This document shows positions 11,062-50,440 of a stretch of 64,000 nucleotides of DNA, piece after piece. The notes under the pieces were generated by a model. The model was not told the origin of the DNA and did not search any database. It saw nothing but the letters and a program-made list of their open reading frames with translations. A program made the translations under genes and the position numbers. Source of the DNA: Glycera tridactyla (Eukaryota); the NCBI GenBank assembly GCA_965644265.1, contig OZ286462.1, forward strand, positions 49,538,001-49,602,000, written 5' to 3'. How positions within the stretch are numbered: position 1 is the stretch's first letter; every line of letters begins with the position of its first letter.

Positions 11062-14000
11062 CTCATCTGCGTTAAGGTCAGCGTTAAGGTCATGTTGAAG
11101 TCCCTTTGCTCAGCAACTAGAGGGCCTAGCTCCATATAATTGGGCACACATATACTTCAGTACATTTGCTATTGAATCCAGCCATCATCAAGGTGCCATA
11201 TGAATGTTCTGCTTGATTAATTTTGGGTTGAAACTTGTGTTTTCTGAAGTGATGGGACTCTGTCATTGGGGGCCATGTTGAAGTCATGTTAAAGTCACAT
11301 TGCTCAGCAACTAGAGTGCCCAGCTCCATGGAATTTGGCATGCATATACTTCAGTACATCTACTAATGAATCCAGCCATCATCAAGGTAGCATCCCAGTG
11401 TTCTGCTTGATTAATTCTGGGATGAAAATTGGCTTTTTTGAAATGATGGGACTTAGCCATCTATGAGCTATTTCTGATGATCCGATTTATTCCTGCTCAG
11501 TTTGCAGTTGATTCTCCACATGTGTCTTTATCCCCTGTGACTGTACATTGCCCATGAAAGACTGATATGTGCAAGATGGTGATTTTGGGGCAAAAAATCC
11601 CTTTTTTGAAATGAATGAACTTGGTCATTTCTGGTGAGTTTTTCAGTACCCAGCCACCCCAAACTTGATACAGAGGGATCTCATAGCATTCCTTAATGAA
11701 TGCAAGTCATGGATGGGGTCTCCCAAGAGGCCTGGTTGGTTTTGGGGTGAAAATTGGTTTTTCAGAAATGGATTTTTCTAAAGATGTTGGTCATCCGTAG
11801 CCACACCAAACTTGGCATGGATGCAGTTCATAGCATTCCCTAATCAATGCTAGCCATGGATGGGGTCTCCCAACAGGCCTGGTCGGTTTTGGGGTGAAAA
11901 TTGGTTTTTCAGAAATGGATTTTTCTAAAGAAGGTGGCTGTCCATAGACAGTCCAAATTTGGCATGGATGTAGTTCATAGCATTCCTTGATGAATGCTAG
12001 CCATAGATAGGGTCTCCTAACAGGCCTGGTTGGTTTTGGGGTGAAAATTGGTTTTTCAGAAATGGATTTTCCTAAAGATGTTGGCTGTCTGTAGCCTCAG
12101 CAAACTGAGCATGGATGTAGTTCATAGCATTCCCTAATAAATGCTAGCCATAGATGGGGTCTCCTAACAGGCCTGGTTGGTTTGGGGGTGAAAATTGCTT
12201 TTTCAGAAATGGACTTTTCTAAAGAAAGTCGCTGGCCATAGCCACACCACACTTGGTACAGGTGTACTAGATAGCATTCCCTAATACATGCTAGCCATAG
12301 ATGGGGTCTCCTAACAGGCCTGGTGGGTTTTGGGGTGAAAATTGGTTTTTCAGAAACAGATTTTTCTAAAGAAGGTGGCTGTTTATAGCCTTGCCATACT
12401 TGGTACAGATGTATGTTATAGCATTCCCTGATGAATTCGAGCCATAGATGGGGTCTCCCAAGAGGCCTGGTTGGTTTTGGGGTAAAAATTGGTTTCTCAG
12501 AAATGGATTTTTCTAAAGATGTTGGTCATCCGTAGCCACACCAAACTTGGCATGGTTGCAGTTCATAGCATTCCCTAATCAATGCTAGCCATGGATGGGG
12601 TCTCCCAACAGGCCTGGTCGGTTTTGGGGTGAAAATTGGTTTTTCAGAAATGGATTTTTCTAAAGAAGGTGGCTGTCCATAGACAGTCCAAATTTGGCAT
12701 GGATGTAGTTCATAGCATTCCTTGATGAATGCTAGCCATAGATAGGGTCTCCTAACAGGCCTGGTTGGTTTTGGGGTGAAAATTGGTTTTTCAGATATGG
12801 ATTTTCCTAAAGATGTTGGCTGTCTGTAGCCTCAGCAAACTGAGCATGGATGTAGTTCATAGCATTCCCTAATAAATGCTAGCCATAGATGGAGTCTCCT
12901 AACAGGCCTGGTTGGTTTTGCAGAGATGCCAACTGCTATGATTTTGGAGTAGCAACTACTCTTTTTAGGCCAAAATTCCTGCATTTAACGAGTGATACTA
13001 CTCTGAAAAATCAGAATTTCTCTTATCATTCCATTGCAAATACTAGCACTGCTACTCTTTGACATCAGCACTGCTACTATTTTTGTCCATCAGAGGTTGG
13101 CATCTATGGTTTTGGGGTGAAAATTGCTTTTTCAGAAATGGACTTTTCTAAAGAAAGTCGCTAGCCATAGCCACACCACACTTTGTACAGGTGTATTAGA
13201 TAGCATTCCCTAATACATGCTAGCCATAGATGGGGTCTCCTAACAGGCCTGGTGGGTTTTGGGGTGAAAATTGGTTTTTCAGAAACAGATTTTTCTAAAG
13301 AAGGTGGCTGTCCATAGCCTTGCCATACTTGGTACAGATGTATGTTATAGCATTCCCTGATGAATTCGAGCCATAGATGGGGTCTCCCAAGAGGCCTGGT
13401 TGGTTTTGGGGTAAAAATTGGTTTCTCAGAAATGGATTTTTCTAAAGATGTTGGCCGTCTGTGGCCACACCAAACTTGGCATGGATGCAGTTCATAGCAT
13501 TTCCTAATGAATGCTAGCCATAGATTGGGTCTCCCAACAGGCCTGGTCGGTTTTGGGGTGAAAATTGGTTTTTCAGAAATGGTTTTTCTAAAGAAGGTGG
13601 CTGTCCATAGACAGTCCAAATTTGGCATGGATGCAGTTCATAGCATTCCTTGATGAATGCTAGCCATAGATGGAGTCTCCTAACAGGCCTGGTTGGTTTT
13701 GGTGGGAAAATTGTTTTTTCAGAAATGGATTTTCCTAAAGATGTTGGCTGTCTGTAGCCTTAGCAAACTTAGCATGGATGTAGTTCATAGCATTCCCTAA
13801 TAAATGCTAGCCATAGATGGGGTCTCCTAGCAGGCCTGGTTGGTTTTGGGGTGAAAATTGTTTTTTCAGAAATGGATTTTTCTAAAGAAAGTCGCTGGCC
13901 ATAGCCACACCACACTTGGTACACATGTACTAGATAGCATTCCCTAATGAATGCTAGCCATAGATGGGGTCTGCCATTAGGCCTGGTGGGTTTTGGGGTG

Positions 14001-17000
14001 AAAATTGGTTTTTCAGAAACAGATTTTTCTAAAGAAGGTGGCTGTCCATAGCCTTGCCATACTTGGTACAGATGTACTGTAGTCTCGCGCGTGTACGCGC
14101 AGGTTCGGACAAACGCGCATCCCCCGTTTCGTCAAAATGTCGGAATAGGCGCATGTCCTCGCGCATACGCACACCCTCGAAAAATCACGGTTGAACTGTG
14201 TGAAACCCGAAAGAATTAATGAGAAATCGATCTTTTTACTCATCCTTGTACACGAATCGCCATCTTGTATCCGTCTTCTTCGCGCATTGCATGATGGGAG
14301 ATGTTGAAAAATATTAATCGTGCGTACCTTGTTCCCTCCAACCCCAACCTCGTTCTCTATTTGGGCTATACAAATATACGATCAGAGACGGTTCTGTCGG
14401 GATTAGGGTTCGAGATCGTGAGGCATCATGGGAGAAATAAAGTTAATAATTACATCATCTAGAAAAATGGCGGCCGGGTGTTGGTAAGTGCTTCATTCCA
14501 CGTGATAGGGCGAAGAATAAAGCAAAAACCAGATAGTTTCGACAAGGTGCGCGTTTGCACGAAAGTACTATACGCGCATCTTCGGACGTACGCGCATCCC
14601 CGTTTCGTCAAAATGTCACGATTTCGCTCACTGCGCGTACACGCGCGAGACTACAGTATGTAATAGCATTCCCTGATGAATTCAAGCCATAGATGGGGTC
14701 TCCCATTAGGCCTGATTGGTTTTGGGTGAAAATTGTTTTTTCAGAAATGGATTTTTCTAAAGAAGGTCGCTGGCCATAGCCACACCATACTTGGCATAGA
14801 TGCAGTTCATAGCATTCCCTAATGAATGCTAGCCATAGATGGGGTCTCCCAACAGGCCTGGTCGGTTTTGGGGTGAAAATTGGTTTTTCAGAAATGGATT
14901 TTTCTAAAGAAGGTGGCTGTCCATAGACAGTCCAAATTTGGCATGGATGCAGTTCATAGCATTCCTTGATGAATGCTAGCCATAGATAGGGTCTCCTAAC
15001 AGGCCTGGTTGGTTTTGGTGGGAAAATTGGTTTTTCAGAAATGGATTTTTCTAAAGAAGGTGGCTGTTCATAGCCACACCATACTTGGTACAGATGTACC
15101 TAATATCATTCCCTAATGAATGCTAGCCATAGACAGGGTCTGCCATTAGGCCTGGTTGGTTTTGGTGGGAAAATTGGTTTTTCAGAAATGGATTTTCCTG
15201 AAGATGTTGGCTGTCTGTAGCCTCAGCAAACTGAGCATGGATGTAGTTCATAGCATTCCCTAATAAATGCTAGCCATAGATGGGGTCTCCTAACAGGCCT
15301 GGTTGGTTTTGGGGTGAAAATTGGTTTTTCAGAAATGGATTTTTCCAAAGAAAGTCGCTGGCCATAGCCACACCATACTTGGTACAGATGTACTTGATAG
15401 CATTCCCTAGGGATGCTAGCCATAGATGGGGTCTCCCATCAGGCCTGGTGGGTTTTGGGGTGAAAATTGTTTTTTCAGAAACAGATTTTTCTAAAGAAGG
15501 TGGCTGTCCATAGCCTTGCCATACTCGGTACAGATGTATGTAATAGCATTCCCTGATGAATTCAAGCCATAGATGGGGTCTCCCATTAGGCCTGGTGGTT
15601 TTGGGGTGAAAATTGGTCTTTCAGCAATGGATTTTTCTAAAGAAGGTGGCTGTCCATAGCCTTGCCATACTTGGTACAGATGTATGTAATAGCATTTCCT
15701 AATGAATGCTAGCCATAGATGGGGTCTCCCAACAGGCCTGGTTGGTTTTGGGGTGAAAATTGTTTCTTCAGAAATGGACTTTTCTAAAGATGTTGGCTGT
15801 CCGTAGCCACTCCAAACTTGGTACAGATGCAATTTATGTCATTCCCTAATGAATGCCAGCCAGGGATCAGGGTTCCTGACAAGGCTGATTGACTTTTGGG
15901 ACAAATGTGGATTTTCAGAAATGGATTTTTCCTAAAGATCGTCGCTGCCCCTAGCCACACACTAAACTTGACACAGATGTCTTTCATAGCATTCCTTCAC
16001 AAGTGCCTGCAATGGATGAGGACCGATGACAACCTTGTTTGTCTTTGGGGACAAAAATGTAAATGTGAACCAGACCTGACTTCTGATGTGCATCAGCTGA
16101 TGGATCCAACTTTTGTTTGAAAATTGATTTTTTTTAAAATTGATTTCCGCAGCATGAGTTGGGTCATCTATGTGTTACATATATTTGAGGCGTTCGAGTT
16201 GGCTTCGTTGAGACGAGGTCCGCCTTCAGTGAAGGCTATGTTTAATATGTATAACAACATGTCATGACTAGAAAATGGCATAAATATCAAGTGAATTGTT
16301 GATTTCCCTCTTGTTATACATCGATATAACAACATGTCAAGACTAGAAAATACTGAAATCTCATGCTTTTGACATATTTATCAACTGAATTGTTTATTTC
16401 CTCACTCAATATAAAAACGACAACTATGCGATCACTTTGGAGTGAATATAAAGAATGGAAGGAAACTAAACCACGTTGATGAAATCATGCGCAGTCTGGC
16501 AGGGGCCGAGAGTTGACGCGATAACTCATTGTTTTTCGATTTTTTTTGTGAGACGTGACAGAGAGCAAAAATAATGGCAGAAAATGAAAGATCGTGTGGA
16601 CGAGTTCCTATCTTGATAGCTCGTCCAGTGGACGAGGGGCTAAACTCACAGGGTATCTAAGATGTGTTTGGCAGCAGGGGCCCATTTCATGACTCTTGCT
16701 AACCTACCAGAAGAATGCATGCTACTGTCACTCATCAGATAAAGTAGGGGTGGAGCTCTTGCTAGTATAGATGAAATAATACTAGTCCAAAGTGTAACTG
16801 TTGCCACTCTGTGGGAGGTCACCTCAGACATGCCTGGTCACCCTAATCAGCTGGACAACCCCCTTCTGACTACCCCCACTTCATGCCCAATCCCAACCCC
16901 AGTTTAATCACAATCAAACCTGTTTCAAACATATGGCCACAGAAAGACACAAAAGTGGATTCTTAGAACAGGTACATGCTTACAGTGGAGGTGAATGGAA

Positions 17001-20000
17001 GTGTAAATACTCATATGGGATGAATGCGGCATTGTCGATTAGGAAAAGTTTCTCCTTAGTACAGTTTTAGGCTAGTTCGACTATATTTTCTCCGAATGTA
17101 CTGAAATCTACAATGGATATCTATCTTGAATATTCATGGGTACATAGGATGGTCTGTCATTGCAGATTCCTTCTTATCAGGTATAGGATATGTGCCAACA
17201 ACATACTTAGGAGACCACCCCAAATGCCAATGAAAAGTGGTCTCTCAAGACAGGTGGTCTCTCATTGGAGGTATATTTGACTAGGTCAAATAGAGAAGAG
17301 CTGATAAAGTGTGGTCTCCCAAAAGAGGGGTCTCCCAAGACAGGTTTCACTGTATGCTATTTATGCAAGGAAGCAGTTTTATAATTTCCCATGAAAAAAA
17401 TCAGCATCTGTGTGTTTTCTGATTCCATTGTATTATTACTATACCTGATCTTGATGATCAATCGAATGGATGTGATAGTTCAATGGACCCGCGAAAGGGC
17501 ATTATTCGGTGAATATTATAATTCTTAGATCATGAAAATTGGACTATAATGTGGTGGAGAGAGCACAATATATGCTGATTTTTAATACTGGCACAATTCA
17601 TTGTGATATATGAGGGCTCAAACTGGATGTTCACTTTTGTGTTCTTTCACCCCTTGATATCCGGGCAAGTGCATGTAAGATTCGGGCAAGTACCTCTTGG
17701 GTCTACTTGCCCGAAGGGCAAGTACCCATTTTCACTTTTGTCGACCACTGATTGTCATGAACTTAATTGTTGATTTCCCTCTATCAATATAAAGACATGT
17801 CAAGACTATAGAATACTGAAATCACATGCTTTTGGCATATTGATCAACTGAATTAATACCTGTACCATTGGCCAAAGTTATTCCTAGAGGTTTGGCTTCT
17901 CGTGGAGATTGCAGTATTACCTGTGATAATGGAATGGCACTCACTGATAGGAAATTTTATGGTTTGTTCATGGCACTGTGACTAGCAGCAATCCATTTCA
18001 ATGACATGATCAAGATTGATCAGGATTTTGCAATCAGTTTATGTATGAGACAGATCGTAGTGAAGATGGACCTGCTTGAGGACACCTTTATGCAAAGACC
18101 ACCCTGCATAGTGACCACAACAGTATCCTACAGTAATCAACTCAGCAAAAGCAACCTGTCGACAAAGACCATTTTGATGTGATGGTGGTAGACAGGTTTG
18201 AGTGTATGCATATTCGATTGGCAATAGAGAAGCTACTGGAAAAAGTAGTGTGTGTGTGGGGGTGGGGGGTGGCAACAAGGGATGCTCCTGTCCATCCATC
18301 GTTATGTTGAAAGGTTATCACAACATTTGGTCATTGAGAGGCATTTCTTGTGATGGATGAATGAGACAGATTTGTATCATCTCACATCTGTCAGCAATTT
18401 CACAAGTCTGGGGAGAGAAGCTGACCAGCAAGAAGATAGGACAAATATGTATCGCAATACGGATGTTTGTGTATCGCGAGTATTGTATGGGATTCTTGTC
18501 TCGGTTCGAACCGGTGTACCGGTATATCGTTACAGCCCTATTTGGCAGCATGAGTGGAGATGTGGAAATCGCCAATATAAAGTATCTTCAACAATGTGTG
18601 TTAAATGTTAGTGATTTTAATCTCACTAGAAAGAGACAGATATTTTGCATGGCTTTGGAGCAGGGGAGGCAAAAGTTCTGATGACTGGGACATGTTTGTT
18701 CTAGAAAATGCATTTAATGATCAGTTTTGTGATGCTAAAAATGAAATACAGAAAATTGATTCTAACTTAGTAAGAGCAATTTAGTGGAATCAAAACCCGT
18801 TTCGATTGTTGAGTGAATCATTCCACCACTTGCATGTGGATTCTCGTAGAAATAAATCTTGTATTACCGGGATTTATTTATCTATTTATTCAACACCTGT
18901 TCATTATACACGACCATAAGAAATCAAAGGCTGATTCTGATTTCCATTGGAAATTATGTTCTGATTAAATCTAGAAAACTGGATCTTCAGGAATGCTGAA
19001 TTAGATGGTTAAGTATTAGGTTATTATTTCAGAAAAAGGATAAAAAAGTACTCAAACAGACAAACATAACATATGCAGTTTGACCGGATATACAAATGAA
19101 CATGATAATCTAGATAATTCTCAACAATCGAGACAGGATCAGGGTAGACATGTATGTATCATATTGTAGATGACAAGTGGCGCTGGTATCGGAGAAGGTG
19201 GGGAGAGTACGTGGAAAGCCATCAACGATGAGGAGGCAGACGAGGATATGGTGGAGGAACTCATAGCCGAGACGGACGCGATCAAGAAAGAGAAGACGCC
19301 TACCAAGAAAAGGGCAACACCTGAAGGTCAGTACGTGGATAAATTGATACAAATTCATGCAACCAAAGTTCTCTGACTTCATCCTGAAAGCAAGCATACT
19401 GCCTCTAATCTTAGATTTCGAGTTTCTTAATTTGGTGTAAGCTGCTCGGAAAACTGGCAGGGATATATCTAAGATTATCGAAATTGGGGGCATCCCCCTC
19501 CTTAACTGAGATGAAGGGTCATTTCTCTACAAATTTTTTCACAGTGGTTCAACTCAATATTGATAATGGGAATCAATCAGGTGATTTGTTGGGGCACCGG
19601 GCCTTGAAGCATGCCAAGGCAAACTGTGCATTCCAACAAGAGTCTATGGTGGTGGCTATTTCATTTAGTTATAACGAGGACCAGAGTGAGATGGTACAGT
19701 TGAAAATTGAATCAGGGTTTAGGTGGAGCTGGAAAATTCGGAATTCGTGGTTGATGATATTATTTCCCTGCATTAAGAATTTGGCGGGGGGGGGGGGGAA
19801 GGGGGGGGGGAGGTATTTCAAGACAGTAGTGGAGAGAGGAAAAAGGCGAACGGTCTGTATTTGTTACCTGTTGTCTGTTGTAGTGGTGGATATTGCTGAC
19901 AGTGATAGCGAGGAGGAAGACGTTGTGATGCTAGGACAAGAGGGCGGAGACATGGAAGCCACAAGGTGAGATGCCGCTAATATCTAAGAAATGGGGACAT

Positions 20001-24939: not shown

Positions 24940-27550
24940 GGGTCATTCCATGGTATTCCGGACATGCACTTCCATTTTTCAAACTTAGTAGTCAGCTGAA
25001 ATTTTTATTCCAAATCATTGTCAACAAGTTCAAGTGTCGGGGAACAACTTCGTTCTGGTCAGAATTTGGAGACTCTGGTAGATATAGCGGTTTTGGGGAG
25101 CGTTGCGGACGGACAAATTTCATATTGCCATAACTTTGATTTGCAAAATCATACGAGTCTCAAATTTGATAACAGACATCCTTCACCTATGTTATTTATG
25201 AAAACTATTGTTTTGGTCCAGATTTTTGGAAATGTTTGAGAAAAAAAATCAATTTTTTGACAAAATAATGTCCGTCCACAACACTCAACCTTCAAAAGTT
25301 CACTTTTTTTGAAGAAATTTCAAATTGTTTTTCTCAAGACTTCAGTTCCTCTTGAAAAATGCAGAGATGATGGTAGGTGGCGAGTTATGAATGAATATCT
25401 CTGCAACTTTTTTTTTTATTAAGATTTCATCAAGTGTCCGTCCGCAAAGCCCGAAAAGCATCTATCAGCAACACTCAGTGTTTGGTAAAAAAAATCTACC
25501 AATAAAAGTTTAGCTCATTTTGGATATCACTTAAAATACTCACATTATAAAGGTCATTGATTATTCCACCCTTGACCCTTTCATGCTCAGATGATCCCCA
25601 AAATTTCATCGAAAAATGTGTCTCTCAATCACAACTTGCAACCTTGGATCTGATCATATGGTGTGACATGGGGAATATGCCGAGCAAATTTGGCATGGAG
25701 AATAACCCACTTGATTTATTGGTTGAAAACAATATGAATACTGTTGCAATGAAGGAAGGGTCGAGTGCACTCACCATGTGTTTTAATGTCTCACATCCCC
25801 CCCCCCACTCCTCCACCACACCTTGCTGAGCAAGCTAGCTGGGAGGGTGGAGTGAGTGATGAGGAGGTGACTTGTACTGAGCAGTGTAACCATGTTCACC
25901 CTATCCATATACAGTAGTTGCTCACCAAGTTGTGAGCAGATCTGGCCTAGTTGCAAGCAGTGAGCAGATCTAGGGTGAGTCCATAGGTAGATAGAGCAAC
26001 CCCCCCCCCCCCCCCTTCCCTCACAGTTAGAAGGGTGGGTGAGTAAGTGGGGAGGGGATGCATCAGGCACACTAATACCTGCAGATCATCACTAACAAGA
26101 GTCACCTGAACCATACACTTGTTCTATTGAAGAACAACTCACTCCGTGTGAATGAAACAAAAAATTGGATATTTTCATGATTTTGAGAAAAATTGGTGAA
26201 AAAGGTGAAATTTTATAAAAACAGGAGAAAAATGACAGAATGATTTCATAGAAATATCAATATGCTCCTCATCTGTAATTAATATACTTAATATAAGAAG
26301 ATATACACATGTATTTCCAGGGTATGGTAAATTATTTTAGTACACCTCACATAACAAGGATAAATGTGTCCATCCACAGCGGTCTAGTGTCCGTCCGCAA
26401 GGCACCATTTTTCCATGTTTTTCCCTGATTTTTGAGAGCTCCTGTGAAAATCTCTTTATATGTTTCAGACATGGACTGAAGATGCTCATTAGGCCCAGTT
26501 ACTGAATAATTGTCCATAAACACAGCAAAAAATGTCAGACTTAGGTGACTGGAAATTGATATTTTCCTGTTTTGGGAGAGAAAAAATCGTAAAAGGGCTA
26601 AAATGGAGTGAAAAGGGTGGGAAATGACAAAATATTCACCCAATAATACTTAAATACTCCTTAACTTTAAGCAAAAATGTACAGGAAGATATCTGAATGT
26701 TTCTCCAGGATGTGGGAAACTATTTTGGTACACCTCATGTAACGGACAGAAGTGTCCGTCCGCTACGGTCAAAAGTGTCCGTCCGCAGCGCAACATCTTT
26801 TCAGATTTTTTTTTTTTTTCGAAGCTCTAGTGAAAATCTCCATATCCATATGTTTCAGTCATGGATTGAAGTTGCTTATTATACCAAATTACTGAATTAT
26901 TGTCCATAAACAGAGCAAAAAATGTCTGACTAAGTGACTGGAAATTGACATTTTCATGATTTCGGAGAGAAAAAATTGTCAAAGGGCTAAAATTTAGTGA
27001 AAAATGATGAAATAATTATCCACAAATACTTGAATACTTGTTATCTTTAATTAAAATAGTACAGGAAGATATTTGAATGTTTTACCAGGATGTGAGAAAC
27101 AATTCTGGAACACCTCATATAGCATGGACAAAAGTGTCCGTCCGCAACGGTCAAAAGTGTCCGTCCGCAGCGCAACATTTTTTCAGATTTTTCTGAATTT
27201 TCTGGAGCTTTGGTCAAAACCACTTTTCATATGCTCTCGGCATATACTCAAGATACTTATCTAGCCCAGTTACTAAATATTTGTCTGTAAACAGAGCAAA
27301 TTTTTTTGACTTTGTGACTGTACATCAAAACCCTTGTCCCAAAAGTGTCCGTCTGCAACGGTCGGGAAAATGCCCCCACAACCAACATGTGAGAGTTAAT
27401 GATAATAAAAATGCCTGTGATATGTTGAGTCTTGTATGTATAATGAATTGGCATAGGAAAAGTTTTGGTTTGGAGTCATGTTTTATCAAGAGATCAGAAT
27501 TATGTCTGCGAAGTGTCCGTCCGCAACGGAAAAATACCATGGAATGACCC
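24940..27550. mobile_element. 2.6-kb non-autonomous TIR element with 4-bp TSD (Sola2-like) and internal repeats of about 380 bp
   Basis: 18-bp TIR GGGTCATTCCATGGTATT/AATACCATGGAATGACCC flanked by TGCA; repeated GTGTCCGTCCGC motifs; three tandem units starting near 26341, 26729 and 27109. Confidence 0.75.
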
Positions 27551-39412: not shown

Positions 39413-39669
39413 NNNNNNNNNNNNNNNNNNNNNNNNNNNNNNNNNNNNNNNNNNNNNNNNNNNNNNNNNNNNNNNNNNNNNNNNNNNNNNNNNNNNNNNN
39501 NNNNNNNNNNNNNNNNNNNNNNNNNNNNNNNNNNNNNNNNNNNNNNNNNNNNNNNNNNNNNNNNNNNNNNNNNNNNNNNNNNNNNNNNNNNNNNNNNNNN
39601 NNNNNNNNNNNNNNNNNNNNNNNNNNNNNNNNNNNNNNNNNNNNNNNNNNNNNNNNNNNNNNNNNNNNN
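39413..39669. other. Assembly gap (N run)
   Basis: 257 N. Confidence 1.
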
Positions 39670-43442: not shown

Positions 43443-43739
43443 NNNNNNNNNNNNNNNNNNNNNNNNNNNNNNNNNNNNNNNNNNNNNNNNNNNNNNNNNN
43501 NNNNNNNNNNNNNNNNNNNNNNNNNNNNNNNNNNNNNNNNNNNNNNNNNNNNNNNNNNNNNNNNNNNNNNNNNNNNNNNNNNNNNNNNNNNNNNNNNNNN
43601 NNNNNNNNNNNNNNNNNNNNNNNNNNNNNNNNNNNNNNNNNNNNNNNNNNNNNNNNNNNNNNNNNNNNNNNNNNNNNNNNNNNNNNNNNNNNNNNNNNNN
43701 NNNNNNNNNNNNNNNNNNNNNNNNNNNNNNNNNNNNNNN
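43443..43739. other. Assembly gap (N run)
   Basis: 297 N. Confidence 1.
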
Positions 43740-50039: not shown

Positions 50040-50440
50040 CACATGTGAGTGCAGGATGGAGCTCACGCATGACCGTGTCAAAGGCAGAATGGCTCACGCG
50101 CCAAGGCAGACTCAGGCTCACCTGTCAAGGCAGACTCAGGCTCACATGTCAAGGCAGACTCAGGCTCACGAGTCGGGCCAGAATGGCTCATGTGTGAAGG
50201 CAGACTCGGCTCATGTGTCAAGGCAGAATGGCTCATGCGCCAAGGCAGACTCAGGCTCACCTGTCAAGGCAGACTCAGGCTCACATGTCAAGGCAAGCTC
50301 GGGCTCACCTGTCGAGGCAGACTCAGGCTCACCTGTCAAGGCAGGCTCGGGCTCAGATGTCAAGGCAGACTCAGGCTCACGTGTCAGGGCAGAATGGCTC
50401 ACGTAATGGAGGCAGACTCGGGCTCACGTGTCATCTGCGA
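50040..50440 (+). repeat. 22/24-bp minisatellite (CAAGGCAGACTCAGGCTCACCTGT)
   Basis: About 15 units; source of the spurious repetitive ORFs in the track. Confidence 0.9.

What the first reader, a model, noticed from the sequence alone, without database searches (positions are those of the whole stretch)
11660..15995. 147-bp satellite with an alpha-satellite-like pentameric higher-order repeat inside an intron
Seen: monomer period of exactly 147 bp in the first half. The variable segments cycle A(GATGTTGGTCATCCG), B(ATAGACAGTCC), C(GTAGCCTCAGC), D(GAAAGTCGCT), E(AGCCTTGCC), giving a 735-bp unit about three times. It then decays into hybrid and duplicated monomers after about 14700. Each monomer has a roughly 45-bp cluster of A/T tracts. 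Established: 147 bp is the nucleosome core length. Inference: early HOR formation by unequal exchange or rolling-circle copying. Nucleosome phasing is speculative because no linker length is included.
Basis: partly seen in the sequence, partly recalled or inferred. Interest (0 to 1): 0.75.

Follow-up and report, generated by a model that had tools for sequence, protein, structure and literature searches.

The report
Transposon-borne 147-bp satellite with pentamer repeat
The 147-bp satellite with a five-monomer higher-order repeat is real, but it is the internal repeat cargo of a non-autonomous Helentron-type transposon lying in an intron of the exosome gene RRP45/EXOSC9, a kind of element already well described in oysters and other invertebrates.

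Summary
Observation confirmed. With two nested transposon insertions removed, 11652-16060 holds 25 head-to-tail monomers of 146-147 bp. Monomers five apart are 95% identical; all other spacings give about 84%. A monomer tree groups them by position modulo 5. There are about four 735-bp higher-order copies (98.4% for the youngest pair, about 94% for the rest), then two in-register hybrid monomer pairs.

The "decay" near 14.1-14.7 kb is a 580-bp TA-flanked MITE. A 186-bp hAT-type MITE sits at 12921-13106.

The array is not free-standing. It fills the centre of a 5279-bp element (10962-16240) with the full HINE (non-autonomous Helentron) layout: T-run ends, perfect 17-nt subterminal inverted repeats, a 5' hairpin, a (CGGCGT)9 microsatellite, central repeats and a 3' palindrome. 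Contigs in four public runs join 10961 directly to 16241, an empty site.

This HINE lies inside an older hAT-like element, within a GT-AG, phase-compatible 9.3-kb RRP45/EXOSC9 intron.

Nothing supports nucleosome phasing, centromere function, an RNA family or coding. This is a new member of a known kind (compare Crassostrea gigas Cg_HINE). The scan has flagged similar 147-bp arrays in Helentron-type elements elsewhere in this genome; those notes are unchecked.

The parts
9719..9904 (+). Upstream exon of the host gene (RRP45/EXOSC9 homologue); GT donor at 9905
   Evidence: Its translation matches human RRP45 residues 282-322, E 6e-6. Upstream exons hit RNase_PH and RNase_PH_C and RRP45 chains. 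Acceptor ...ttctag| and donor |gtaagc were read.
9905..19169 (+). Inferred 9265-bp intron holding the whole transposon nest; the next exon starts at 19170
   Evidence: Canonical GT...AG, with phase 0 at both exon edges. Human RRP45 continues about 120 residues beyond the last matched exon. There is no RNA evidence, and the downstream exon has no significant database match.
10745..18540 (.). Outer hAT-like non-autonomous element, the host of the HINE, flanked by the 8-bp target duplication TTTGGCAG (10737-10744 and 18541-18548)
   Evidence: Ends TAGGGCTGT...ACAGCCCTA and identical 8-bp flanks were read.
10962..16240 (+). HINE-type (non-autonomous Helentron-like) element, 5279 bp. Its boundaries are ambiguous by 4 nt because TTTA stands at both ends.
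   Evidence: Contigs in runs X1, X2, X4 and X7 join 10961 to 16241, skipping 5279 bp. The structural modules are listed in the rows below.
10965..10981 (+). 5' subterminal inverted repeat ACCTCGTCTCAACGAAG, 3 nt from the 5' end
   Evidence: 17 nt, 100% complementary to 16203-16219. These are the only two matches in the window, where chance predicts 0.02.
10981..10994 (+). Inverted repeat (IR) that folds back on the 5' subTIR
   Evidence: DNA hairpin of -10.1 kcal/mol, z = -4.2.
11007..11061 (+). Microsatellite (CGGCGT) x 9.2
   Evidence: TRF, 100% matches.
11089..11453 (+). Older array of 194-bp units (1.9 copies), distantly related to the 147-bp monomer
   Evidence: TRF; nhmmer E 4e-6 and 0.024 against a monomer; alignment A1.
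11454..11651 (+). Degenerate monomer-like spacer before the array
   Evidence: Partial alignment to the monomer's T/A-tract region.
11652..16060 (+). 147-bp array of 25 monomers. m1 is a diverged e-type; there are four pentameric HOR copies; m23 is e-like; m24 and m25 are degenerate edge monomers.
11799..12533 (+). HOR copy 1 (a-b-c-d-e), 735 bp
   Evidence: 98.4% identical to copy 2 and 93.9% to copies 3 and 4.
12534..13462 (+). HOR copy 2, interrupted by the hAT-type MITE
12921..13106 (.). Nested 186-bp hAT-type MITE with the 8-bp target duplication TGGTTTTG (12913-12920 and 13107-13114)
   Evidence: Borders were read. Two more copies lie at 5842-6026 (87%) and 7083-7266 (82%); the latter has its own 8-bp duplication.
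13463..14777 (+). HOR copy 3, interrupted by the TA-flanked MITE
14077..14656 (.). Nested 580-bp MITE with perfect terminal inverted repeats and a TA target duplication (Tc1/mariner-like)
   Evidence: The inverted arms 14075-14102 and 14631-14658 (28 nt, TA included) are 100% complementary. Borders were read. Other runs hold copies with different flanks (loose ends at 14075 and 14659).
14778..15657 (+). HOR copy 4 with one extra monomer: a, b5'/other3' (m18), d-like5'/b3' (m19), c, d, e5' (m22)
   Evidence: Type-diagnostic columns.
16203..16219 (+). 3' subterminal inverted repeat CTTCGTTGAGACGAGGT
16222..16236 (+). 3' palindrome GCCTTCA-G-TGAAGGC, 4-8 nt from the 3' end
   Evidence: Read; forms a stem-loop in the DNA fold.

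Best explanation
The array is the central tandem-repeat module of a non-autonomous Helentron-type transposon (HINE). The element, 10962-16240, inserted into a T-run inside an older hAT-like element, within an intron of the RRP45/EXOSC9 gene. It brought with it, or then grew, a run of 147-bp units derived from older 194-bp units that still stand at its 5' side. A block of five diverged monomers (735 bp) was then duplicated several times by out-of-register but homologous (unequal) exchange or replication slippage, giving about four HOR copies. Later one-monomer register shifts made the hybrid pairs m18+m19 and m22+m23. Two MITEs landed in single HOR copies after that. The array has no evident cellular function here; it is selfish, neutral DNA that shows how transposon-borne repeats start to behave like a satellite. 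Shown: the array, the HOR, the hybrids, the element's structural modules and the empty site. Inferred: the exchange mechanism, the order of events and the intron status.
For: The HOR is shown. All HINE modules occur in the published order (5' subTIR, IR, microsatellite, variable spacer, central repeats, 3' subTIR, palindrome; PMC7492417; PMC4067079), as seen. Contigs of four runs under three organism labels join 10961|16241 exactly at the T-run outside the subTIRs, so the 5.3-kb block is one insertion. Loose ends at 10959/10960 with unrelated upstream sequence, and very high summed contig depth on the monomers and the left flank, point to many other copies of the family. Hybrid monomers switch type in register. 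Each nested MITE occurs in only one HOR copy. Monomers at both array edges are the most diverged (m24 about 72%, m25 about 46%, u194 units), as expected for exchange-driven homogenisation in the interior.
Against: No autonomous Helentron (Rep/helicase/endonuclease) is in the window; no ORF reaches 180 aa. The superfamily assignment therefore rests on structure alone. The 4-nt TTTA at both ends could be read as a target duplication, which Helentrons are not supposed to make. Because the HINE sits in another repeat, the empty-site contigs could be paralogous copies of the outer element rather than alleles. Whether the HOR formed in situ or was carried in from a donor copy is unresolved. Contigs cannot validate the long-range assembly of the array.
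Confidence: 0.85

Rival explanations
1. A free-standing satellite that arose in situ in the intron by tandem duplication of intron sequence, alpha-satellite-like and unconnected with a transposon.
For: The tandem array with HOR and diverged edge monomers is what any satellite shows. No other copy of the monomer lies in this 64-kb window.
Against: The array is bounded by perfect 17-nt inverted repeats, a microsatellite and a 3' palindrome in the HINE order. The whole 5279-bp block is precisely absent in contigs of four runs. Monomer-matching contigs reach very high summed depth in runs that carry the empty site, so the family is dispersed.
Confidence: 0.05
2. The HOR is an assembly artefact, a mis-joined or artificially duplicated repeat.
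For: Tandem repeats are error-prone in assemblies, and no raw or long reads were available. Only short-read contigs were laid.
Against: HOR copies differ by 12-47 substitutions per 735 bp, in a graded pattern. Two different MITEs with intact target duplications each sit in a different copy. The hybrids are in register. Artefactual duplication would give identical copies, and collapse would remove copies rather than create ordered types.
Confidence: 0.04
3. The repeat is functional: a 49-codon coding repeat (147 = 3 x 49), a structured RNA, or a nucleosome-positioning or centromere-like sequence.
For: One minus-strand frame is free of stops in 15 of 23 monomers, giving a 155-aa ORF. The unit length equals the nucleosome core length. 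There is an A/T-tract cluster.
Against: The ORF has no Pfam hit and no relative among 5.8 billion protein clusters. Variable sites show no significant excess at third codon positions (27, 17 and 20 columns by phase). The diverged 194-bp units show no protein-level conservation. The monomer does not fold better than shuffled sequence (z = -0.25). There is no Rfam or tRNA hit, no 10-11 bp WW periodicity and no CENP-B-box-like motif.
Confidence: 0.04

Closest known systems
[quoted passage not shown] 2020, PMC7492417)
   Same: The modular layout is the same: 5' subTIR + IR + microsatellite, a variable 10-500 bp spacer, satDNA-like central repeats in a fixed orientation, then 3' subTIR + palindrome. 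Both insert in T-rich/TT sites and occur in gene introns. CL6 has a 147-bp consensus at 39.6% GC; here the monomer is 147 bp at 43.5% GC. [quoted passage not shown]
   Different: Sequence identity to CL6 or its flanks could not be tested, because the consensus sequences are held only as images or truncated sheets. Conserved words of this monomer are absent from the C. gigas satellitome sequence file, so this may be another species or family. The subTIR is 17 nt rather than 11-12. The microsatellite is a hexamer (CGGCGT), not GTCY/GTCK. The array has 25 monomers, against a CL6 mean of 4 and an overall maximum of 29.3 in that study. That paper does not describe HOR organisation.
DINE-1 / HINE non-autonomous Helentrons (Thomas, Vadnagara & Pritham 2014, PMC4067079)
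   Same: SubTIRs lie 2-4 nt from the 5' end, with an IR next to the 5' subTIR, a microsatellite, central repeats, a short 3' stem-loop, insertion in TT with T-runs at the boundaries, and no coding capacity.
   Different: The 3' subTIR lies only 21-25 nt from the 3' end (38-60 nt in the mite families). No autonomous partner was identified here.
Primate alpha satellite higher-order repeats
   Same: Monomers within a HOR are diverged (78-91% here), while HOR copies are much more alike (94-98%). Edge monomers are more diverged than interior ones.
   Different: About 4 copies and 3.6 kb, not megabases. The array is euchromatic, intronic and inside a transposon. The monomer is 147 bp, not 171 bp, and is unrelated in sequence. 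There is no CENP-B-box-like motif and no evidence of centromere function.
Tandem-repeat-containing elements of other bivalves (pearl CvA/CvE/CvG of Crassostrea virginica; DTC84 of Donax trunculus), as cited in PMC7492417 and PMC11136912
   Same: Short satDNA-like arrays lie between conserved flanks with a microsatellite. These elements are now regarded as HINEs.
   Different: They were not compared by sequence here, since no reference sequences were available. Their arrays are typically only a few monomers long.

Membership tests
HINE (non-autonomous Helentron) | Subterminal inverted repeats of about 11-15 nt, a few nt inside the 5' end | tested here: met
   17-nt perfect pair at 10965-10981 and 16203-16219, 3 nt from the 5' end.
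HINE (non-autonomous Helentron) | Short IR complementary to the 5' subTIR, and a microsatellite in the left flank | tested here: met
   Hairpin at 10964-10994, z = -4.2; (CGGCGT)9 at 11007-11061.
HINE (non-autonomous Helentron) | Palindrome or stem-loop downstream of the 3' subTIR, near the 3' end | tested here: met
   GCCTTCAGTGAAGGC at 16222-16236.
HINE (non-autonomous Helentron) | Insertion into TT or a T-rich site without a target duplication | tested here: inconclusive
   The empty site reads ...AATGATT|TTTAATATG, so the site is a T-run. However, TTTA stands at both ends, which could be either element-borne Ts or a 4-bp duplication.
HINE (non-autonomous Helentron) | Multiple dispersed copies sharing the termini | tested here: inconclusive
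   Contigs whose loose ends diverge exactly at 10959/10960, and high summed depth on the left flank and monomers, suggest other copies. No second copy is in the window, and no other genomic copy could be fetched.
HINE (non-autonomous Helentron) | An autonomous Helentron partner (Rep-helicase-endonuclease) with the same termini | not testable with these tools
C. gigas CL6 / Cg_HINE_6 | At least 70% sequence similarity to the CL6 monomer and the LF/RF consensus | not testable with these tools
   The consensus sequences are not held as text. Only the length (147 bp) and the layout agree. Conserved monomer words are absent from the C. gigas satellitome file.
Alpha-satellite-type centromeric HOR array | HOR copies much more alike than the monomers within a HOR | tested here: met
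   94-98% against 78-91%.
Alpha-satellite-type centromeric HOR array | Long homogeneous arrays at centromeres, with CENP-A/CENP-B association | tested here: not met
   The array is 3.6 kb with about 4 HOR copies, inside an intron and a transposon. It has no CENP-B-box-like motif. Chromatin data are not available.
Nucleosome-positioning repeat | An approximately 10-bp periodic WW dinucleotide signal, or a repeat length equal to core plus linker | tested here: not met
   WW autocorrelation at lags 10-11 equals that of shuffles. The 147-bp unit leaves no linker.

The most novel reading that the evidence does not exclude
The pentameric HOR arose inside a transposon-borne array at a single euchromatic locus. 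Its youngest copies (HOR1 and HOR2, whose d and e variants draw almost no contigs from other runs) would be private to this haplotype. If so, this locus catches a HINE central array at the moment it turns into a self-expanding satellite. Different loci of the same family would then evolve different HOR periods: other first-stage notes mention 3-mer and 4-mer HORs and a 735-bp unit elsewhere, all unchecked. That would make this genome a natural series for measuring how HORs are born. Alternatively, the HOR block could be mobilised as a unit by the Helentron.
Probability: 0.2. Interest if true: 0.5.

Novelty: new member of a known kind. Interest (0 to 1): 0.3.

Why it matters
It turns an apparently exotic "alpha-satellite-like HOR in an intron" into a documented instance of a known process, in which Helentron-type non-autonomous elements carry and seed satellite-like arrays. 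The locus is unusually clear. It has complete termini, an empty site, a long array (25 monomers, where the oyster study reports a mean of about 4), a clean 5-mer HOR with datable copies, in-register hybrids, and two later MITE insertions that act as time markers. It could serve as a worked example of early HOR formation by unequal exchange in euchromatin, but it does not change current understanding.

Tried and rejected
Coding repeat: a minus-strand frame is open in 15 of 23 monomers, but there is no Pfam hit, no homologue and no codon-phase signal.

RNA family or tRNA/SINE origin: nothing found. The single hit, mir-598 on the microsatellite, scores 23 bits against a gathering score of 69.

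Stable monomer fold: z = -0.25.

Nucleosome signal: none. CENP-B box: none.

Metagenome scans for the monomer: the 31-nt pattern found nothing. The 19-mer found 29 contigs, none of which matches the monomer by nhmmer, so these are chance hits.

Full-text search of papers for six monomer words: no hits.

Search of the C. gigas supplementary files: the CL6 sheet is truncated, and the satellitome sequences lack the monomer's conserved words. Neither the species nor identity with CL6 could be established.

The search of earlier findings by sequence returned nothing.

The N runs at 9193-9348, 39413-39669 and 43443-43739 were left untouched.
Full report

Yes. Tandem Repeats Finder reports 147-bp periodicity from 11652 to 15995. 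Laying the sequence out in rows of 147 shows the register directly. It also shows two foreign blocks that shift the register.

A profile search with one monomer finds 25 consecutive units between 11652 and 16060, and none elsewhere in the 64-kb window. I then removed the two blocks, each with one copy of its target duplication. After that, the first 11 monomer intervals are exactly 147 bp and the later ones are 146-150 bp.

**2. The higher-order repeat**

- In the first 16 monomers, mean identity is 95.3% at lag 5 and 92.6% at lag 10. It is 83.5-84.2% at lags 1-4 and 6-9.
- In a maximum-likelihood tree, types b, c and d are clades with 95-100% support. Five of the six e monomers form a clade (83/89 support), and type a is a short-branched grade close to the family consensus. 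The type labels need 6 changes on the tree, against a minimum of 5 and a shuffled mean of 15.6; 0 of 200 shuffles were as low.
- The order of monomers is m1(e-like) | abcde | abcde | abcde | a b x c d e | e | m24 | m25.
- The 735-bp copies are 98.4% identical for copies 1 and 2, and 93.6-94.8% for all other pairs. Different types within one copy are 78-91% identical, mean 84.6%.
- Type-diagnostic columns show that m18+m19 is a b monomer split by one monomer length of d-like sequence. m22+m23 is an e monomer duplicated in the same way. Both switch type in register. This is the signature of unequal homologous exchange.
- Edge units are the most diverged: m24 is about 72% identical to the others and m25 about 46%.
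- On the 5' side stand a 194-bp x 1.9 array and a degenerate unit that still align with the monomer.

**3. The two interruptions are transposons, not decay**

- 12921-13106 is a 186-bp element with CAGAG...-type ends and an 8-bp duplication, TGGTTTTG. Two further copies lie at 5842-6026 and 7083-7266. The second has its own 8-bp duplication, so this is a hAT-type MITE.
- 14077-14656 is a 580-bp element with perfect terminal inverted repeats and a TA duplication, that is, Tc1/mariner-like.
- Each sits in only one HOR copy, so both insertions came after the HOR duplications.

**4. What the array belongs to**

Upstream of the array, reading 5' to 3', lie:

- a T-run;
- ACCTCGTCTCAACGAAG (10965-10981);
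- a complementary IR that forms a hairpin, -10.1 kcal/mol, z = -4.2;
- a (CGGCGT)9 microsatellite;
- a spacer.

Downstream lie CTTCGTTGAGACGAGGT (16203-16219), then the palindrome GCCTTCAGTGAAGGC (16222-16236) and a T-run. The two 17-mers are perfectly complementary and are the only such pair in the window, where chance predicts 0.02.

This is the published layout of HINEs, the non-autonomous partners of Helentrons. That layout is: subTIRs a few nt from the 5' end, an IR, a microsatellite, central repeats, a 3' stem-loop, and insertion in TT without a target duplication (PMC4067079). In Crassostrea gigas the same elements carry satDNA-like central repeats of 138-181 bp. One cluster there, CL6, has a 147-bp unit (PMC7492417).

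**5. Evidence that the block is one insertion**

I laid Logan contigs of four public runs, under three coded organism labels, on 10700-16400. In every run a contig joins 10961 directly to 16241 and skips 5279 bp. Four letters (TTTA) fit on either side of the joint. Flank identity is about 98-99.7% (tables 5 and 8).

Other contigs match the element's 5' end and then diverge exactly at 10959/10960. Summed contig depth on the left flank and the monomers is orders of magnitude above that on the outer flanks. Both observations point to many other copies of the family.

Two caveats apply.

- The HINE lies inside another repeat. This is a hAT-like element, 10745-18540, with ends TAGGGCTGT/ACAGCCCTA and the 8-bp duplication TTTGGCAG on both sides. 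The empty-site contigs may therefore be paralogous copies rather than alleles. Either way, they define the element's edges.
- Only contigs were available, so depth is not copy number. The long-range order of the array is not independently validated.

An assembly artefact is nevertheless unlikely. The HOR copies differ by 12-47 substitutions, and each carries its own different MITE with an intact target duplication.

**6. Gene context**

Plus-strand ORF pieces upstream hit RNase_PH and RNase_PH_C. Their best matches among solved structures are RRP45/EXOSC9 chains, E 3e-18. The piece at 9719-9904 aligns to human RRP45 residues 282-322.

That exon is preceded by ...ttctag and followed by gtaagc. 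At 19169/19170 a ...ttgtag acceptor opens an acidic/lysine-rich ORF that ends at a gtcagt donor. Both exon edges are phase 0.

The array is therefore most probably inside a 9265-bp intron, nested three deep: intron > hAT-like element > HINE > MITEs. The downstream exon has no significant database match and no RNA data were examined, so intron status is inferred.

**7. Function-type rivals**

- One minus-strand frame is stop-free in 15 of 23 monomers, and 147 = 3 x 49. But the 155-aa ORF has no Pfam hit and no relative in the large protein collection.
- Variable columns are not significantly concentrated at third codon positions. The diverged 194-bp units show no protein-level conservation.
- There is no Rfam family or tRNA. 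The monomer folds no better than shuffled sequence.
- The A/T-tract cluster is real, at consensus positions 89-131. However, WW dinucleotides show no 10-11 bp periodicity.
- There is no CENP-B-box-like motif.
- The 147-bp length is best read as this family's unit length, not as a nucleosome signal.

**8. Mechanism and order of events (inferred)**

1. A HINE with 194-bp and 147-bp related arrays inserted in the T-run.
2. Monomers diverged into types.
3. A 735-bp block was duplicated by unequal exchange or slippage. The older duplications are about 6% diverged; the last one (copies 1 and 2) is 1.6% diverged.
4. One-monomer register shifts produced the hybrid pairs.
5. The two MITEs inserted.

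Bins covering the d and e monomers of copies 1 and 2 draw almost no contigs from the other runs, while consensus-like monomers draw very many. This weakly suggests that the youngest HOR copies are private to this locus and formed in situ. Contig placement among near-identical monomers is ambiguous, so this is only a hint.

**9. Comparison and novelty**

The kind is known: Helentron/HINE-borne satDNA-like arrays dispersed in euchromatin and introns (PMC7492417; reviews PMC10048060 and PMC12628747).

I could not establish the species or sequence identity with CL6/Cg_HINE_6.

- The reference consensus sequences are not held as text.
- Conserved words of this monomer are absent from the C. gigas satellitome sequence file.
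- They are also absent from all searchable papers.

Modest departures from the oyster description are the array length (25 monomers), the clean pentameric HOR (not discussed in those papers), a 17-nt subTIR and a hexamer microsatellite.

Other first-stage notes of this scan report 147-bp arrays in Helentron-type elements on other pieces of the same genome, some with 3-mer or 4-mer HORs. They gave me the lead to look for Helentron termini, which I then verified here myself. The notes on other loci remain unchecked.

**Verdict:** a real feature and a new member of a known kind, of low to moderate interest.

Noticed in passing
window 10745-18540 (TSD at 10737-10744 and 18541-18548): An outer hAT-like non-autonomous element with ends TAGGGCTGT...ACAGCCCTA and the 8-bp target duplication TTTGGCAG hosts the HINE. 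Its right part contains an internal 106-bp duplication, about 82% identical (16286-16391 and 17757-17854).
   Followed up: partly
window 5842-6026 and 7083-7266: Two more copies (87% and 82% identical) of the 186-bp hAT-type MITE that interrupts the array. Both lie in other introns of the same RRP45/EXOSC9 gene. The 7083-7266 copy has the 8-bp duplication TGCTAGCT.
   Followed up: partly
window about 2688-9904 and 19170-19327, + strand: The RRP45/EXOSC9 homologue is spread over at least six exon-like ORF pieces (RNase_PH, RNase_PH_C and a C-terminal acidic tail).
   Followed up: partly
window 11652-16060, minus strand: One reading frame is free of stops in 15 of 23 monomers (longest ORF 155 aa, 13161-13628). 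No family or homologue was found. It is probably a by-product of a stop-free consensus frame and a unit length divisible by 3.
   Followed up: yes
window 1573-2426, 10202-10604, and 17-bp tandems at 10370-10514: A recurring dispersed repeat translates to ...GGLYREVVFIERWSL... and contains 17-bp tandem units (GGTGGTCTTTATAGCG). It is probably a SINE or MITE family, with several copies in the gene's introns.
   Followed up: no
window 7462-7672; 26342-27209; 50074-50433: Other tandem repeats: 53 bp x 4, 380 bp x 2.3, and a 24-bp minisatellite x 15.
   Followed up: no
The first lies in the intron just upstream of the 9719 exon.
   Followed up: no
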